Positions 1 through 62,500 of a DNA stretch of 64,000 nt are shown here, in pieces. This DNA comes from Vitrella brassicaformis CCMP3155 (taxonomy: Eukaryota > Protista > Chromerida): assembly GCA_001179505.1 (NCBI GenBank), contig CDMY01000562.1, forward strand, positions 1-64,000, in the 5' to 3' direction. Positions within the stretch are counted from its first letter, which is position 1; each line of letters starts with the position of its first letter. Both the position numbers and the translations under genes were made by a program. A model generated the notes under the pieces. The model made no database searches. It saw nothing but the letters and a program-made list of their open reading frames with translations, and was not told the DNA's origin.

Positions 1-409
1 GGCAGTCACATCGTCGGCTGCATGTGGACAGCGCAGACGTCCCTTTCTCGTTGCATGCGCAACAGGGGGGCCCGCCGCCGTCTCGCGGGATGAGGGTAGG
101 TGGAGGGGGTTGGGTGTAGTCCGATACACGCTCGCTCATCCGAAAAGGAGGAGAAACAGCCGAGAAATCACCAACTCAATCATGGGGGGTAAGATGTGAT
201 ACATACATGGATGGATGGATGCATGTGTATGCCAGTGGGTATGTTCGTGTGTTGTGGTGTGCGGACTGACCGTTTACATGAAAGCGGCTTTGTGACCCAA
301 GAGCTTGCGAGAGGCAGGCGAGGGAACTGGGGTGCATTTCGGCATGCACCAGATCCACTATGACGGCCGCTGCAAGTGTTCATCTTTCTCTTGACGCCTC
401 GATGACGAG

Positions 410-1849
410 ATGAGCTTATCATCTTCCTGGTGCATCGTTCTGGTGGTGGTTCAGGGCATTATCGCCGGCAGCACCTTCATCTTCACAGACACCCTCAAGG
501 ATGCCATTGATCCGCTATCGCTTGTGGCTTTCCGACTCGCCATCGGCAGCGCGGTGCTGACGTCGGTCTTCCTACTATGGCAGCCGCAGGGGCGAGGCGA
601 GCGGCAGGAGTCGCTCGCGTCCTCCACCCATCTCATGAGCGTCGTCGCGCTGTCGATAATGAACCAGATCGTCCCGTACAGCTGCTACCCCATGGCGATG
701 AAGCAGGGCATCTCGGTGACCACAGCGGCCATCCTGTCTGGTGCCGGTCCTCTCTATGCATCGTTGCTCAAGCTGCTCGCTGGGTGGCGCTGGCTGACTT
801 GTGGGCATCATCATCATCGGGGCGGCACGTCCACTGTCCGGGCTATACAGATGAGGGAGGCCGCACCGGCTGATGGCGCATTATCTCCAGCACCTTATGA
901 CGGTGGTGGTGAGGAGGAGGACCATGAGGCGCGCTCAGCCACACGCACCCTGACAGCGGGGCGCGGCCCACTGAGGTGGCAGAGTGGTCTCATAGACGAC
1001 AAGAGGGACGTCTTCGGGCTCGTCATCGGCTTCATCGGCGTCACATTAGTGGTGGCCTTGACCACGCACGGCTTACCGCATCAGCACGGCAAAGGGCAAG
1101 GGGCGGCGGCGGCGGAAGCGTCGGCCACGAGCGTTGTCTTGGGTCTGGTGCTGCTGGCCGCTGCGCTGTTGAGCAAGGCCTCGGCAGCCGTCTTCGCCGA
1201 GGCAAAGGTGACGCCGCACTTCCACTTCCTCACTCTGGCGTGGCTTCAGACAACCATAGGGTCTGCCATTGCGTGGACGCTGGCCCTTGCGGTCGAGTCG
1301 CCCCTGGAGACCCTCATGCAGCTGCTGAGCTTCGGTGGTGATGATAGTAGTGAGGGTGACGACCGTCACTTTGACACGTTGGCCCCGCCAGCTATGCCCT
1401 GTGGCACACCCACCAACAGCAGCAGCAGCAGCAGCAACACAGCGCTATGCCGTGTGGACCTGGATCATCAAGACGCTGAGGACTATCTGGGTGTGTGGGT
1501 GTCGCTGCTGTACTTGGGTGTGGCCGCCTCCTCTCTGGTGTACCTCTGCCAGTTCCTGCTCATCGGCCAGGTGGGGGCCGTCAAATCCATGGTGGTCGAC
1601 TACATCACTCCCGTCGTGGGGGCGGTCGAGGGCGGGGTGCTGGCCGGCCGGTCTGCACAGTGGGGCGGCGTGTATGTCACAGTGGGGCAGGTGGCGGGCC
1701 TGGTGCTCATATTGCTGGGGGTGGCACTCATGAGGTGGACGGCGCCATGTCGGCAGCCAGAGCAGAGTGGCAATCGTGATGAACACCGCGGTGGTACTAA
1801 TGGGGTGGGGGAGGAGAGCCTGCAGCCGTTGAGGCAACAGGCCGGATGA
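410..1849 (+). CDS. EamA/DMT-superfamily membrane transporter (intronless, 479 aa)
   Basis: Single ORF with about 10 hydrophobic segments in two repeats: 'IDPLSLVAFRLAIG', 'AAILSGAGPLYASLL', 'GLVIGFIGVTLVV', 'IGQVGAVKSMVVDYITPVVGAVEG', 'QVAGLVLILLGVAL'. This is the typical EamA pattern, with low-complexity loop insertions. Confidence 0.78.
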   Translation: MSLSSSWCIVLVVVQGIIAGSTFIFTDTLKDAIDPLSLVAFRLAIGSAVLTSVFLLWQPQGRGERQESLASSTHLMSVVALSIMNQIVPYSCYPMAMKQGISVTTAAILSGAGPLYASLLKLLAGWRWLTCGHHHHRGGTSTVRAIQMREAAPADGALSPAPYDGGGEEEDHEARSATRTLTAGRGPLRWQSGLIDDKRDVFGLVIGFIGVTLVVALTTHGLPHQHGKGQGAAAAEASATSVVLGLVLLAAALLSKASAAVFAEAKVTPHFHFLTLAWLQTTIGSAIAWTLALAVESPLETLMQLLSFGGDDSSEGDDRHFDTLAPPAMPCGTPTNSSSSSSNTALCRVDLDHQDAEDYLGVWVSLLYLGVAASSLVYLCQFLLIGQVGAVKSMVVDYITPVVGAVEGGVLAGRSAQWGGVYVTVGQVAGLVLILLGVALMRWTAPCRQPEQSGNRDEHRGGTNGVGEESLQPLRQQAG

Positions 1850-57376: not shown

Positions 57377-58143
57377 CAGACAGACATGAGTGAGTGAGAT
57401 CCGCTTGTGGGGTGGTGGGCCGGCTTCCTCTCTCTGGCGAGCTGCAGGAGGGAACAAGGGCGCGAGGGAGAGTTTTCTCGTCTGGTGGTGGCGGTGTGTG
57501 GCGGGGTGTCCTGCCTGCCTCAGCCAGCCAGCCGTTCTTACACACTGGTGTCGACAGCGTGGCTGCTTTGCCTTACTGGTTGACACGGTTGTACAGACAG
57601 TCTTACTGACTTGTCCATTCTGCGTGCGTGAGTTCGTGTGTGACATGGTATTCATTACACTGACATGACGTGACATAAACACTTTATCGCTCTAGGGGGC
57701 GAGTGTGCGGGTTTCATTTCTTGTACCCCTCAAGAAGACCTCCATCGCCAGGATCGAGGCACCTAAACAAAAACTGAGCTCTTCAATTGAATGCACCTGC
57801 ACACACACACACACACACGCAGAGGGGTGCCGTGCCGTGCCGTGGACATTCAGATGCGAAAACATCCGCACAGCATGTGTGTATAGATGGATTGACTGAT
57901 TCAGACACAATGGATGGCTTCAATGCATTGGTCCCTGCCTGCAGCACAGACAGCATGCAGACAGACCAGACATGTTTTCAACAAACAACACGGAGTCCGT
58001 CCCTCCGTCCATCTATGCGATGCGAGGGAAGCATCCACGTCTCCCGCACCCCGTCCAATCCACCAAACATAACATGCATAACCGGCCACACGAAGGAAGA
58101 CATGCTCACTACATGGACATCGGTCTGTCTGTCTGTCTGTCTG

Positions 58144-59444
58144 TCAGTGAAAGGTCGCCACATAGATGGGCAGATGCGACCCCGCCACGTGCCGCCCGGT
58201 GGTGTCAAAGCCGAGCAGCCCGTCGTGCTCGCAGTTCTTCATCAGCCGCTCGCAGTCCACCCGCACGCCCCTCTCTCTAGTCGACACCTGCGTCGCCACC
58301 CAACACGCTATCTCACGCCGCCTCTCGACCGCTGCACCCATGTGGCTCACAAGCACCGACGTCGACCGAGACACACGCGGCGCCAGCAGCGGGGCCGCCT
58401 TGGCCCTGTGGCACTGGTCGCCCTCGACCACTTCCACAAAGGCTTGTGGGTTGGGGGCGCCGGGGAGCACCTCTAGAAGCAGCGTGCTGCTTAAAGGGTT
58501 GCTCTCGTCCCAGAGCAGCGTGTAGAAGGCCCGTATGACGCGCTTGACCACCTCGGTGCTCTGGATGTGGTACCATTCCGGGTGCGAGAGCACCAGCCGC
58601 AGATGGGAGTCCCCCATGTTCTCGAACTCGCCGAGCGCCTTGAGCACGGCCGCCCTCTCGGCCTCCGGCGGCCGCCGGATGTCCATCGCTTCCATCTGCA
58701 GCTCATTTCTAAGGTGCTGCACGGCCATGTCGTCCGTGCAGTGGTAGAAGCGCCGCCCTAAATGCTCTCTGTGGATCTTGGCGACGAAGTCCTCCAGCAG
58801 CTGGTTGATGCGGCCCTGCCCGAGTGTGTGCTCCGGGACCAATTCTAACAAGGCGTTGAGAACCAGGACGAACTCGCCAAGGTCTCCCCCTGGTGTGCAG
58901 AGGGAGGGGGTCGCCACACGGTCGTCGAGGCACGAAAAGTGCTGGCTCGCCACGGGCATGAGCGAGAGGCCGGTGAAGCGGCCATATGACTCCGACAACT
59001 CCACCATGCTCATTCCCTGGCCGGGGCGGCTCTGGTGTAGCTTGACCTTCGATGGGCTGCAGTGGGTGGTCTGACTGCCGGCGTTGCCGTCGTGGTCGTG
59101 CTGTTTGTCGCTGCAGCTGCACTTGGCGTTGTAATGCCCGCCATTCAGCTCCACAGATCCGGCGAGGTAGTCGGTTTGGTCGGCCAGTTTGACGTGGGAA
59201 TGCACCTGGATCAGGGAGCTGGCGCCCGCCATCTCACCTGACGGGGTGGTCACCTGCACCGCATGCACACATCATCCATCCATCCACCGATCCACCCACA
59301 GCAAAGAGCAGCAGATCATCCATTCATCTCTTCATACCTGGCCTCCCTCTTTCTCACCGTTAATTTGCGCTTCTCGTGGGCGCATACTGCTGGTATGAGT
59401 ATGAGCAAGAACACGACGGTCATCACGCTCAACGGGAAAGCCAT
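58144..59444 (-). CDS. Secreted beta/zeta-class carbonic-anhydrase-like protein (2 exons)
   Basis: Signal MAFPLSVMTVVFLLILIPAVCA. Motifs SCLDDR (CxDxR), TPGGDLGEF, FYHCTD and MGDSH. Intron at about 59257-59356. Confidence 0.6.
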
Positions 59445-59511: not shown

Positions 59512-62500
59512 ATGCGCGCGGCTGTGGTAGTGACGGGAGGCGTTGCCGCAGGTGGGACGGCAATCCTCAGTCGTTTCGAGCTCAGGAAGAACCTCGAGGC
59601 CAACAGCCCGCCGGTGCTGTGCTACCTGAGGACCCACATCAACGAGGCCATCGTCAGTGACACGCCCAGACTCACCAGCCCTTACACACCACCACCATGG
59701 TACTCCCACAACCCTCGCTCATTGACACACAGACAGGAACCAGACCTACCAGACAGGAGAGGAAGAGTAGAGACGAATGGGCGACGCAACGCAACGAGGA
59801 AGGAAGGCCTTCTGTCTGTCTGTCTGTCTGTCTGTCTGTGTCATCCCATGCATCAGGTGTTCGGGCAAGCACACGCAGATTATCGTATGGATGTGAGTGG
59901 CCGGCCAGGGGGGGGGGGGGGAGGNNNNNNNNNNNNNNNNNNNNNNNNNNNNNNNNNNNNNNNNNNNNNNNNNNNNNNNNNNNNNNNNNNNNNNNNNNNN
60001 NNNNNNNNNNNNNNNNNNNNNNNNNNNNNNNNNNNNNNNNNNNNNNNNNNNNNNNNNNNNNNNNNNNNNNNNNNNNNNNNNNNNNNNNNNNNNNNNNNNN
60101 NNNNNNNNNNNNNNNNNNNNNNNNNNNNNNNNNNNNNNNNNNNNNNNNNNNNNNNNNNNNNNNNNNNNNNNNNNNNNNNNNNNNNNNNNNNNNNNNNNNN
60201 NNNNNNNNNNNNNNNNNNNNNNNNGGGGGGGGGGGGGGGGGGAAGGCAAGAGAAGAGAAGGGCAACACACCGCACCGCCCTCGGCATTCAAGGTATTGCG
60301 TGCATGGCATGCTGCCAACAGGTATCGGAACATGTTTTGCGCCAACAAGCCGCTGACGATCCGCAGACAGCTGGTCCCGCACAAGGACGGCGCGCAGACG
60401 GCCCTGGACTGGTATGAGGAGAAGGACCCCCACACTCTGCGGCCGCTGGCGCCCAACGCGCCGGTGGTCATCCTCTGCCACACCATCAACGGCGACAGCG
60501 AGCAGTTCAAGCTCATGGCCTACCACCTGAGGCAGAAACAGGGCTTCCGATGCGTCTGCCATGTCAGAAGGTAGGCGGTGCGCATGGCATGCATTAAGAG
60601 AGGGGAGGGGAGGGGCTCTCTCTGCATTCATTGTGTGGTGCTGTCTGTGTCGTGTGGTGTGGTGTGGTGTGTGCCCTGCAGGGGGTATCACGGCGTGAAG
60701 CTGACTACGGCAGAGTTCGACACGATGGGCTCATACAATGACACCGAGGAGGCCATCGCTGAGGTAGGTCGCAACACTCACACAGCACTCTCACTCACAC
60801 GCCACACGCACAGAGACTGAGATGCCCCATGGGTATGTATCTGTGTGTGTCCTGTCCGCCCACACATGCATGCATCCGTCCGCAGATAGAGCGTCAGTAC
60901 CCGCACGCCCCCGTGCTTCTGGTGGGCATGTCGGCTGGCACCGGGCCTGTGGTGCGCTACCTGGGCATCAGCAGGGACAAGTCGAGGGCGGTGGCAGGTA
61001 GGAAGGAGGGTGGGACATCACATCACCCCTACCGACGGGTGGCTGGGCTGCACTAACCAGGACACATCTATCCATCCATCAGGCTGCCTGATATCACCGG
61101 GGTACGACATCCAGAGGTGTTTCGGAAGGTAAGGTACACACCTACCTAAACCCACCCACACACACACACATCGGCACGCCATGCAAGGGGCAACAATGCT
61201 CATGCGCATGCTCATGCTCATGCTCTCCCTCCCTCCCTGCCCAGGTTTGAGTGGCCGTATGACTGGATCGTCATTCAGCGGCTCCGTGAGTATCTGAAGC
61301 GAAACGCCCGGGAGATCCTGGGGCTGCCCCCTTTGCCAGACGCCGACCAGCCAGGCAGCCACGCCCCCCATCACCATCACCATCACCCCGACCACCACAC
61401 GACGGCCATCACGCCCATCCACCCCGAAGAGGAGAATGCCTCCATTGCACATCCGCCGCTGCTGCGGAACCTGATGCTCAAGCGAGAGCTGGATCGGGGC
61501 AATGGCAATGGCACTGGGGAGAGGGAGAGGGAGAGGGAAAAGGGGGTGGTCATGGGCAAGTTGGAGAGCCTGCGGCGGCGCGTGTATGAGTTCATTCTGA
61601 ATCGCTGTGCAGATCTGCAGGAGGTCGGTGGGAGGAACGGAGACATGCTTTGTGGCATTGTGTATGTGTGATTGTGTGTGTGTGTGTGTGATTGTGTGTG
61701 GTCAGCTGCACGATTCGTTGCATGTGTTTGCGGGTTACACGTCTGCGGAGGACTACTACAGGAACTCCAACCCCATGAACGTCGTGTACGACATATCGGT
61801 GCCCTTCCTCGTGGTCAATAGCCTCGGTCAGTCAGTGCCGTGCCTCAGCCAGCCAGCCAGCCACCCATCCAATACGCACCGATAGACACACTGGACACAC
61901 TGGACGGACGCATGGGTGTGGGTGTGGGTGTGTGTGCTCAGATGACCCCTGCACCATCTCTGCCAATATCGAGTATGAGCTCTTCCGCAAACAGCCTAAT
62001 GCACTCCTGGGTACCCAAATGACACGCCACAGCACAACAGCACTGTTTGTTCTTCACTCACTTGGCTGTTCTTTCCTACCATCCATCAGCTCTGACGAAG
62101 CACGGGAGCCACTGCTGCTTCCTGCAAAGTGAGAACCTACAATGGCGCCCAACAGGCGCCATACATTGCCGGCCGCCATTCTTGTCTCCATCTTTGTGTG
62201 TCCAGAATCCCAGCCGTTGGGCCCGTCGTGGGTTGAGGAGCTCGTAGGCGAGTACTTCTCGTCGGTTCTGTCGCAGCTCAACATCCCCTCCCACCACACG
62301 CAGTCCATCGAGGACCCCATACCCATTCCCACCCCCCCTCCCAGCCCAACAGCGACACCCTCAACCACCACCACCACCACCAACCCGCCCACCTTTCCCC
62401 TTGGCCGCCACCCACACGTGAGCAACATCGACATGGACATGGACATGGCCTCACTCGCCATCCCAGGGCTGGTCAACACCTCAGCTCTCGCGGCCTTCCA

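What the first reader, a model, noticed from the sequence alone, without database searches (positions are those of the whole stretch)
58144..59444. Secreted carbonic-anhydrase-like protein with rewired metal ligands
SCLDDR (about 58918-58932) and TPGGD echo the CxDxR and PGG motifs of beta/zeta-class enzymes, in which the metal is bound by Cys-His-Cys with an Asp-Arg dyad (e.g. diatom CDCA1: CVDGR...MPGG...HGD...GCG). Here the expected HxD reads YHCTD and the expected GCG(H) reads GDSH (about 58603-58614), so the third ligand Cys appears replaced by Asp. This could mean a new metal preference, a different hydratase activity or a pseudo-enzyme. A His/Cys-rich N-terminal segment (KCSCSDKQHDHD...HC) may bind metal. 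A signal peptide suggests an extracellular or periplastid carbon-concentrating role.
Basis: inference. Interest (0 to 1): 0.7.

Follow-up and report, generated by a model that had tools for sequence, protein, structure and literature searches.

The report
Secreted zeta-carbonic-anhydrase-fold protein, rewired metal site
This alga gene encodes a secreted protein with the fold of the diatom cadmium/zinc (zeta-class) carbonic anhydrase, from a very large, unnamed family also found in Toxoplasma and bacteria, and its branch has replaced two of the three metal-binding residues, so its metal and substrate are open questions.

Summary
A two-exon gene on the minus strand of Vitrella brassicaformis (59444..59358, 59253..58144) encodes a 391-398 aa protein with an N-terminal signal-like leader.

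No Pfam, NCBIfam or PDB sequence match exists. A confident AlphaFold model (pLDDT 85.5) matches only the three repeats of diatom CDCA1, the zeta-class carbonic anhydrase (CA): Z 12.1-12.4, about 185 of 210 residues aligned, next best Z 3.4.

A profile search finds 1310 cluster representatives of the family. Many members carry the canonical Cys-His-Cys triad plus the Asp-Arg dyad (SCxDGR, FYMHTD, GCGH). A bacterial member of that kind also matches CDCA1 alone (Z 12.4).

The Vitrella protein belongs to an alveolate branch (Toxoplasma TGME49_230535, Eimeria, Alphamonas, a dinoflagellate, Stentor) whose triad reads Cys130-Cys194-Asp237. So both the second ligand (His to Cys) and the third (Cys to Asp) are changed.

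A carbon-concentrating role is unlikely, because most orthologue holders are heterotrophs.

Activity, metal and substrate are untested. A Vitrella paralogue with Ser at both Cys positions keeps a non-metal or pseudo-enzyme reading open. The scan had not reported this family before.

The parts
59358..59444 (-). Exon 1: start codon (59444-59442; alternative annotated start 59423-59421) and signal-peptide-like leader, ending ...AVCA/HEKRKLT
   Evidence: Sequence and translation. P0001 starts MTVVF... and continues KLT|VTTPSG across the same splice.
59254..59357 (-). Intron, 104 nt, GTGAGA...CAG, phase 0
   Evidence: Read from the sequence; consistent with database protein P0001. No RNA reads were available to confirm it.
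58144..59253 (-). Exon 2 (369 codons plus stop TGA at 58146-58144)
   Evidence: ORF list and translation; 100% identical to P0001.
59059..59121 (-). N-terminal Cys cluster C67-x-C69 ... C87. The cysteines are conserved; the His/Asp-rich spacer between them is not.
   Evidence: A1: C67, C69 and C87 at least 90% conserved. In A3: C 60, 50 and 69 of 104, the rest mostly gaps. pLDDT below 50 for residues 73-82.
58147..59034 (-). Zeta-CA (CDCA1 repeat)-like domain, residues 96-391 of P0001
   Evidence: VIA-align: model 96..390/391 against CDCA1 R1, R2 and R3, Z 12.1-12.4, rmsd 3.3-3.7, 184-188 residues aligned. The Foldseek top 5 hits are all CDCA1, prob 0.98-0.99.
58918..58932 (-). C130-L-D132-D-R134: first metal-ligand Cys plus the Asp-Arg dyad
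   Evidence: D132 and R134 invariant in A1; D 94 and R 101 of 104 in A3. CDCA1-R3 has C473-V474-D475 with the Asp/Arg dyad (PMC8217695).
58870..58896 (-). T142-P-G-G-D146-L-G-E149-F150: the family's most conserved loop and helix start
   Evidence: G144 98, G145 100 and E149 99 of 104; strand 139-142 followed by helix 145-157.
58729..58743 (-). H193-C194-T195-D196-D197: Cys194 occupies the column that is His (second ligand) in canonical members
   Evidence: Column 194: H 43, C 39. Column 193: M 36, L 18, H 17, F 17. T195 82 and D196 86 of 104.
58597..58614 (-). G236-D237-S-H239-L-R241: Asp237 occupies the column that is Cys (third ligand) in canonical GCGH members
   Evidence: G236 invariant. 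Column 237: C 51, D 34. Column 239: H 79, F 13. CDCA1-R3 has C535-G536-F537. Residue 237 caps helix 238-245.
58318..58512 (-). Second-lobe conserved residues W270 (58512-58510), C303 (58413-58411), P310, H326 (58344-58342), R334 (58320-58318); roles unknown
   Evidence: W270 94, C303 82, P310 97, H326 84 and R334 98 of 104.

Best explanation
The gene encodes a secretory-pathway protein whose main domain (residues about 96-391) is a single zeta-class carbonic-anhydrase-type repeat. It belongs to a very large family without a Pfam model, a structural sister of diatom CDCA1. The family's canonical members keep the Cys-His-Cys metal triad and the Asp-Arg dyad. The Vitrella protein sits in an alveolate-wide branch whose triad has become Cys130-Cys194-Asp237, with the dyad D132/R134 and His239 retained. 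The mechanism I think most likely is inferred, not shown. Two thiolates and a carboxylate hold a divalent metal. The Asp-Arg dyad orients a metal-bound water or hydroxide, which attacks a small linear molecule such as CO2, COS or CS2, as in beta- and zeta-CAs. The changed ligand set probably shifts metal preference and/or substrate. The role is a general secretory or extracellular one shared with heterotrophic alveolates, not a photosynthetic carbon-concentrating one. Shown here: the gene model, family membership, the fold, the ligand-column substitutions and the taxonomic spread. Inferred: metal binding, catalysis, substrate and location.
For: Fold: the model has pLDDT 85.5. CDCA1 R1/R2/R3 match at Z 12.1-12.4, rmsd 3.3-3.7 and about 185 of 210 residues aligned, while the next hits (beta-CAs 8thm, 1ddz) score Z 3.4 or less. 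Foldseek ranks only CDCA1 chains with prob 0.98-0.99. Family: 1310 cluster representatives at E<=1e-3 and 916 at E<=1e-10. Ligand triads among 104 aligned members are C-H-C 36, C-C-D 27, C-C-C 6 and C-C-N 3. A canonical bacterial member (pLDDT 89.3) also matches CDCA1 alone: Z 12.4, 18% identity, next best 6.5. Motif equivalence with the published CDCA1-R3 site (C473-V474-D475, H525, C535-G536-F537): C-[IVL]-D-G-R and G-C-G-[H/F]. All three positions lie in one lobe, at the ends of strands 128-130 and 191-196 and at the cap of helix 238-245. This agrees with the CDCA1 lobe that carries its three ligands (PMC4413181). The dyad, TPGGD-GEF, T195-D196 and G236 are conserved across the branch. Orthologues occur in Toxoplasma, Hammondia, Eimeria, Cystoisospora, Cyclospora, Alphamonas, Colponema, Tripos and Stentor.
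Against: No residue-level superposition on CDCA1 could be obtained. The ligand equivalence therefore rests on fold, secondary-structure position and motif match. No sequence method links the family to CDCA1 or to PF18484. Across the family the triad columns are among the least conserved of the motif positions, with at least 30 state changes on the tree, whereas D132, R134, G144, G145, E149, W270, P310 and R334 are nearly invariant. A second Vitrella copy has Ser at both Cys positions but keeps the other motifs. Some branch members have N, S or V at column 237. Cys194 occurs essentially only together with Cys130, which would also fit a disulfide in a secreted protein. No expression data for Vitrella were obtained.
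Confidence: 0.55

Rival explanations
1. Pseudo-enzyme or binding protein. The zeta-CA fold is kept, but the catalytic metal site is gone. Cys130 and Cys194 form a disulfide in the oxidising secretory pathway, and the conserved Asp-Arg, GGD-GE, TDD and R334 surface binds a ligand or partner without catalysis.
For: The triad columns change state at least 30 times among 104 members, and some members have no plausible ligand at any of the three positions (for example D-T-S with F239). The Vitrella paralogue has Ser at both 130 and 194 but keeps D132, R134, GGD-GEF, TDD and GD-H. P0030 lost both cysteines together. C194 is seen essentially only with C130. The protein and its relatives carry signal-like leaders and further conserved cysteines (C67, C69, C87, C303).
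Against: Within the alveolate branch C130, C194, D237 and H239 are at least 90% conserved over deep divergences, from ciliate and colponemid to apicomplexan. The Asp-Arg dyad has a known catalytic role in beta- and zeta-CAs. Asp and Cys are both good metal ligands, and C-C-C intermediates exist.
Confidence: 0.25
2. Sulfur-compound enzyme. The family's real business is small sulfur molecules (COS or CS2 hydrolysis, or persulfide/thiosulfate chemistry), and the alveolate protein is a secreted variant of that activity rather than a CO2 hydratase.
For: CDCA1 itself hydrolyses CS2 (PMC8217695). Seven canonical bacterial members carry an N-terminal rhodanese domain (E down to 2e-14). In one such locus the gene overlaps a downstream thioredoxin gene. 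In another it follows YeeE/YedE-type sulfur-transporter-like genes.
Against: All of this context belongs to the canonical C-H-C bacterial clade, not to the C-C-D alveolate branch. Other bacterial and eukaryotic loci show no sulfur context. No rhodanese domain is present in the Vitrella protein.
Confidence: 0.15
3. One reading: an extracellular or periplastid carbonic anhydrase of the carbon-concentrating mechanism with an unusual metal.
For: A zeta-CA fold with a signal-like leader in a photosynthetic alga.
Against: The closest relatives are in non-photosynthetic alveolates. The residue after the predicted cleavage site is His. The next segment is conserved in heterotrophic relatives as part of the mature protein. 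Two of the three canonical ligands are changed. Earlier scan notes report alpha- and iota-type CAs elsewhere in this genome (not tested here).
Confidence: 0.05

Closest known systems
Zeta-class carbonic anhydrase CDCA1 of Thalassiosira weissflogii (PDB 3BOB, 3BOH, 3UK8, 7BEZ; Pfam PF18484)
   Same: Same overall fold (Z 12.1-12.4, about 185 of 210 residues aligned). The C-x-D-x-R motif with the Asp-Arg dyad is shared. A G-[C/D]-x-[H/F] motif sits at a helix cap, where CDCA1 has C535-G536-F537. Some family members are multi-repeat proteins, as CDCA1 is (P0031 and P0032 have 4 repeats).
   Different: Only 10-12% identity, and no hit to PF18484 or to CDCA1 by HMM. About 110 extra residues are present, including roughly 35 between ligand positions 2 and 3. 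The triad is Cys-Cys-Asp instead of Cys-His-Cys. An extra N-terminal Cys-bearing module is present. The protein has a single repeat. It occurs in heterotrophic alveolates.
Beta-class carbonic anhydrases and their COS/CS2-hydrolase relatives (e.g. PDB 1DDZ, 8THM)
   Same: The same active-site logic: Cys-His-Cys plus an Asp-Arg dyad. According to the literature one CDCA1 repeat mimics a beta-CA dimer. They are weak structural hits (Z 3.2-3.4).
   Different: Only marginal structural similarity and no sequence similarity. The ligand spacing is different (H-x-x-C in beta-CAs).
Canonical (C-H-C) members of the same unnamed family, including bacterial rhodanese fusions (P0125, P0134, P0146, P0170 and others)
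   Same: Clear homologues (profile E down to 1e-40 and better). They share the domain, the TPGGD-GEF loop and W270, P310, H326 and R334.
   Different: They keep His at column 194 and Cys at column 237 (FYMHTD, GCGH). Some are fused to rhodanese and sit next to thioredoxin or sulfur-transporter-like genes.
Toxoplasma gondii TGME49_230535 and coccidian orthologues ('putative membrane protein', 'hypothetical protein')
   Same: Same branch, same C-C-D triad and same architecture, at 33-37% identity.
   Different: Uncharacterised. No paper in the searchable library mentions the gene id.

Membership tests
Zeta-class carbonic anhydrase (CDCA, PF18484) | CDCA repeat fold (two-lobe alpha/beta domain) | tested here: met
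   Z 12.1-12.4 to R1, R2 and R3, with 184-188 of about 210 residues aligned and the next hit at Z 3.4. Foldseek prob 0.98-0.99, though E is only 5e-3.
Zeta-class carbonic anhydrase (CDCA, PF18484) | Sequence match to the family profile PF18484 | tested here: not met
   No Pfam hit for the protein, for 25 relatives or for 104 family members. Profile searches of PDB sequences do not find CDCA1. The whole-genome PF18484 search was blank, but its controls did not ring either.
Zeta-class carbonic anhydrase (CDCA, PF18484) | Cys-His-Cys metal triad | tested here: not met
   Family alignment: Vitrella has C130, C194 and D237 where canonical members have C, H and C. The equivalence to CDCA1 Cys473/His525/Cys535 is inferred from motif and fold, not from a residue-level superposition.
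Zeta-class carbonic anhydrase (CDCA, PF18484) | Asp-Arg dyad next to the first Cys (C-x-D-x-R) | tested here: met
   C130-L-D132-D-R134. D132 and R134 are invariant in 25 relatives, and D 94 and R 101 of 104 family-wide.
Zeta-class carbonic anhydrase (CDCA, PF18484) | CO2 hydration activity with Zn or Cd | not testable with these tools
   Needs recombinant protein, metal analysis and an activity assay.
Beta-class carbonic anhydrase | Beta-CA fold and the H-x-x-C motif | tested here: not met
   Best beta-CA structural hits score Z 3.2-3.4. There is no Pro_CA Pfam hit and no H-x-x-C at the relevant position.
Unnamed zeta-CA-like family defined here (profile A2/A3) | Full-length profile match with the D-x-R, TPGGD-GEF, T-D, G236, W270, P310 and R334 signature | tested here: met
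   P0001 scores E 6.6e-107 against the family profile, and all signature residues are present.

The most novel reading that the evidence does not exclude
This gene is a member of an undescribed, very large sister family of the zeta-class carbonic anhydrases (at least 1300 clusters at 50% identity, in bacteria and many eukaryotes). In that family the metal triad has been rewired repeatedly. The alveolate Cys-Cys-Asp branch, which includes Toxoplasma TGME49_230535, would be a new kind of secreted metalloenzyme with a different metal and/or substrate (for example COS or CS2 rather than CO2). That would amount to a new CA-related enzyme class present in apicomplexan parasites.
Probability: 0.3. 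Interest if true: 0.8.

Novelty: new variant of a known kind. Interest (0 to 1): 0.62.

Why it matters
Zeta-class carbonic anhydrases are usually described as a diatom speciality, known for using cadmium. Here the same fold turns up in a family at least 1300 clusters strong that has no Pfam model and no informative annotation. It spans bacteria (some members fused to rhodanese), algae, ciliates and coccidian parasites. Its members show natural experiments at the metal site: C-H-C, C-C-D, C-C-C, D-H-x and ligand-free forms.

If the Cys-Cys-Asp branch is active, it widens the known ligand chemistry and probably the substrate range of CA-type enzymes. It would also give Toxoplasma and Eimeria a secreted enzyme with no host counterpart. 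If it is inactive, it is a clean case of a conserved secreted pseudo-enzyme. Either outcome can be tested directly with one recombinant protein.

Tried and rejected
- **Sequence searches for exon 2, 25 relatives and 104 family members:** Pfam, NCBIfam and PDB-sequence searches returned nothing meaningful.
- **PF18484 in the Vitrella genome:** the search was blank, but the control genomes did not ring either, so it says nothing about absence.
- **ESM Atlas:** the feature search was blank. The Atlas's own model of the protein is poor (pLDDT 0.38). A shape search with my model gave only TM<=0.26 rows.
- **Expression and splicing:** no run on record as RNA holds the stretch. All laid contigs are colinear with the genome, intron included, so the splice rests on the database model and on homology.
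- **Residue-level superposition on CDCA1:** I could not bring a CDCA1 sequence or coordinates into the session. The mapping of C130/C194/D237 onto Cys473/His525/Cys535 is therefore by motif, secondary-structure position and published residue numbers only.
- **Joining the exons:** Exon 2 was searched by reference, and after that the database protein P0001 returned by the search was used.
- **Literature:** no paper in the searchable library names TGME49_230535 or a 'CDCA-like' family of this kind.
- **Rejected, His193 as a ligand:** the column is unconserved.
- **Rejected, the His-rich N-terminal stretch as a conserved metal site:** it is unconserved and has low pLDDT.
- **Rejected, a plastid transit peptide:** the post-leader segment is conserved in heterotrophs.
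- **Complex prediction:** no job was sent, because no protein-protein binding is claimed.

Full report
**What is there.** The window comes from Vitrella brassicaformis CCMP3155: the protein of the main exon is 100% identical to a database entry of that species, 'unnamed protein product', 391 aa (P0001). The gene lies on the minus strand.

- The first ATG is at 59444-59442. The database model starts at a second ATG, 59423-59421.
- Exon 1 ends at 59358 (...AVCAHEKRKLT).
- A 104-nt GT..AG intron spans 59357-59254.
- Exon 2 runs 59253-58147, with a TGA stop at 58146-58144.

Exon 2 was searched by reference, and later steps used the database protein that the search returned, which carries exactly this splice. 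No RNA run was found. The public contigs that hold the stretch are colinear with the genome, so they neither confirm nor contradict the splice.

**No sequence-level annotation.** Pfam, NCBIfam and PDB-sequence searches give nothing for the protein, for a profile of 25 relatives, or for 104 family members scanned one by one. The Pfam model of the zeta-class enzyme (PF18484) is never hit.

**The fold.** An AlphaFold2 model built on 25 homologues is confident: mean pLDDT 85.5, and above 90 for most of residues 90-391.

- Foldseek against the PDB ranks five chains of diatom CDCA1 first (prob 0.98-0.99, E 5e-3 to 1e-2). Everything below looks like noise.
- An exhaustive VIA-align search of 48,161 representative chains gives CDCA1 repeat 3 at Z 12.1 (rmsd 3.4, 184 of 214 residues). 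The next hits are at Z 3.4 and 3.2 and happen to be beta-class CAs.
- A second look gives Z 12.1-12.4 for repeats 1, 2 and 3, with 184-188 residues aligned.

The match covers a whole domain and stands far above the background. I take the zeta-CA repeat fold as established for residues about 96-391. The Vitrella domain is about 110 residues longer than a CDCA1 repeat.

**The family.** A profile of the domain searched against 1.84 billion cluster representatives finds 1310 proteins at E<=1e-3, 916 at E<=1e-10 and 325 at E<=1e-30. This is a large family, not an orphan. Some members have two to four repeats (for example a 1888-aa protein of Cyanophora), which recalls the three repeats of CDCA1.

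I aligned 104 single-domain members and counted the columns. The nearly invariant residues are D132, R134, G144, G145, E149, G236, W270, P310 and R334. The three columns at Vitrella positions 130, 194 and 237 are bimodal:

| Column | Residue counts (of 104) |
|---|---|
| 130 | C 74, D 18 |
| 194 | H 43, C 39 |
| 237 | C 51, D 34 |

Taken together, 36 members read C-H-C, with the motifs S-C-x-D-G-R, F-Y-M-H-T-D and G-C-G-H. That is the Cys-His-Cys triad plus Asp-Arg dyad that defines beta- and zeta-class active sites.

The published CDCA1 repeat-3 site has these parts (PMC8217695):

- ligands Cys473, His525 and Cys535;
- Asp475 and Gly536 bonded to the metal-bound water;
- Val474 and Phe537 in the CO2 pocket.

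This matches the family's C-[I/V/L]-D-x-R and C-G-[H/F], including the F seen in 13 members at column 239. The three positions sit at the ends of strands 128-130 and 191-196 and at the cap of helix 238-245. All are in one lobe, as described for the metal-binding lobe of CDCA1 (PMC4413181).

As an independent check, I folded a canonical bacterial member (P0120, pLDDT 89.3). It too picks CDCA1 alone: Z 12.4, rmsd 3.1, 177 residues aligned, 18% identity, next best 6.5. The Foldseek top six hits are all CDCA1.

**The rewiring.** The Vitrella protein reads C130, C194, D237. Twenty-seven of the 104 members share this triad. Six read C-C-C, three C-C-N, and eighteen start with Asp.

But the second ligand is changed as well, from His to Cys. 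His239, just after Asp237, is conserved in both the canonical and the rewired groups, so it is not the compensating ligand in any simple sense.

On a maximum-likelihood tree built with the ligand columns masked, the triad states are strongly clustered but need at least 30 changes. The Vitrella protein falls in a group of 20 rows, 16 of them C-C-D (SH-aLRT 92, quick search, unrooted). The family therefore remodels this site often.

**Who has it.** The C-C-D/C-C-C branch is alveolate-wide:

- Vitrella;
- the colpodellid Alphamonas edax;
- Colponema vietnamica;
- the dinoflagellate Tripos fusus;
- the ciliate Stentor coeruleus;
- coccidia: Toxoplasma gondii TGME49_230535, Hammondia, Neospora, Besnoitia, Cystoisospora, Cyclospora and several Eimeria.

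Their database names are 'hypothetical protein' or 'putative membrane protein'. No paper in the searchable library mentions the Toxoplasma gene id.

Most of these organisms are heterotrophs, so a carbon-concentrating role cannot be the conserved function. The leader looks like a plain signal peptide. The residue after the likely cleavage site is His. The following segment (S-L-I-Q-V-H-S-H..L..Q.D-Y-L.G) is conserved in Alphamonas and Colponema as part of the mature protein, so it is not a transit peptide.

The cysteines C67, C69, C87 and C303 are conserved and probably structural. The His/Asp-rich spacer is neither conserved nor confidently modelled.

**Hints about chemistry.** CDCA1 hydrolyses CS2 as well as CO2 (PMC8217695).

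- Seven canonical bacterial members have an N-terminal rhodanese domain.
- In one such locus the gene overlaps a thioredoxin gene.
- In another it follows YeeE/YedE-type sulfur-transporter-like genes.
- Other loci show nothing consistent.

This points to sulfur chemistry for that bacterial clade. It is only a lead for the alveolate branch.

**What argues for caution.** Vitrella has a second copy (contigs C716 and C966 of the assembly). That copy reads H-F-S-S-L-D-D-R and F-Y-H-S-T-D-D, so both cysteines are replaced by Ser, while the dyad, GGD-L-GEF, TDD and G-D-V-H are kept. Another relative (P0030) also lost both cysteines together, and Cys194 occurs essentially only with Cys130. The two cysteines therefore act as a pair. 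That pair could be two ligands of one metal or a disulfide in a secreted protein. I could not get coordinates or a residue-level superposition, so I cannot decide this from geometry.

**Verdict.** It needs correcting on the second ligand, and it is unsupported on the N-terminal metal site and the carbon-concentrating role.

My best reading (confidence about 0.55) is a secreted metalloenzyme of the zeta-CA fold with a Cys-Cys-Asp site, acting on a small linear molecule. The main rival (about 0.25) is a conserved pseudo-enzyme or binding protein with a disulfide in place of the metal.

Whichever holds, the family itself appears to be undescribed: large, without a Pfam model, structurally tied to CDCA1, with canonical and rewired branches and a Toxoplasma member. 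I class the finding as a new variant of a known kind.

Noticed in passing
G000:C716 (L002 about 400-1750, minus strand) and G000:C966 (L003): A second, multi-exon copy of the same family in Vitrella. Both ligand cysteines are replaced by Ser (HFSSLDDR, FYHSTDD), while the dyad, GGDLGEF, TDD and GDVH are kept. It is split over two small contigs that overlap in profile positions 179-279, so these may be two copies or haplotigs.
   Followed up: partly
L007 5460-7359, L008 2536-4435, L013 1224-3590 (metagenome contigs): Bacterial canonical (Cys-His-Cys) family members fused to an N-terminal rhodanese domain. In one locus the gene overlaps a downstream thioredoxin gene. In another it follows two YeeE/YedE-type sulfur-transporter-like genes. 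This suggests a sulfur-compound function for that clade.
   Followed up: partly
P0031 (Cyanophora paradoxa, 1888 aa), P0032 (1877 aa), P0173, P0053, P0063: Family members with two to four tandem copies of the domain, reminiscent of the three repeats of CDCA1. P0144 (1161 aa) combines the domain with an H+-pyrophosphatase match, which may be a gene-model fusion.
   Followed up: no
window 59512-60574 (+): A divergently transcribed neighbour starts only about 67 bp upstream of the finding's ATG (head-to-head). Its downstream part has a weak alpha/beta-hydrolase match (PF00561, E 0.016). An assembly gap (run of N, roughly 59930-60250) interrupts it.
   Followed up: partly
window 58115-58143 and 59811-59839: Tetranucleotide microsatellites. 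One (GACA/TCTG type, seen as CLSVCLSV in ORF translations) lies directly after the stop codon of the gene, and another lies in the neighbour. The reads tool skipped 58115-58155 as a repeat.
   Followed up: no
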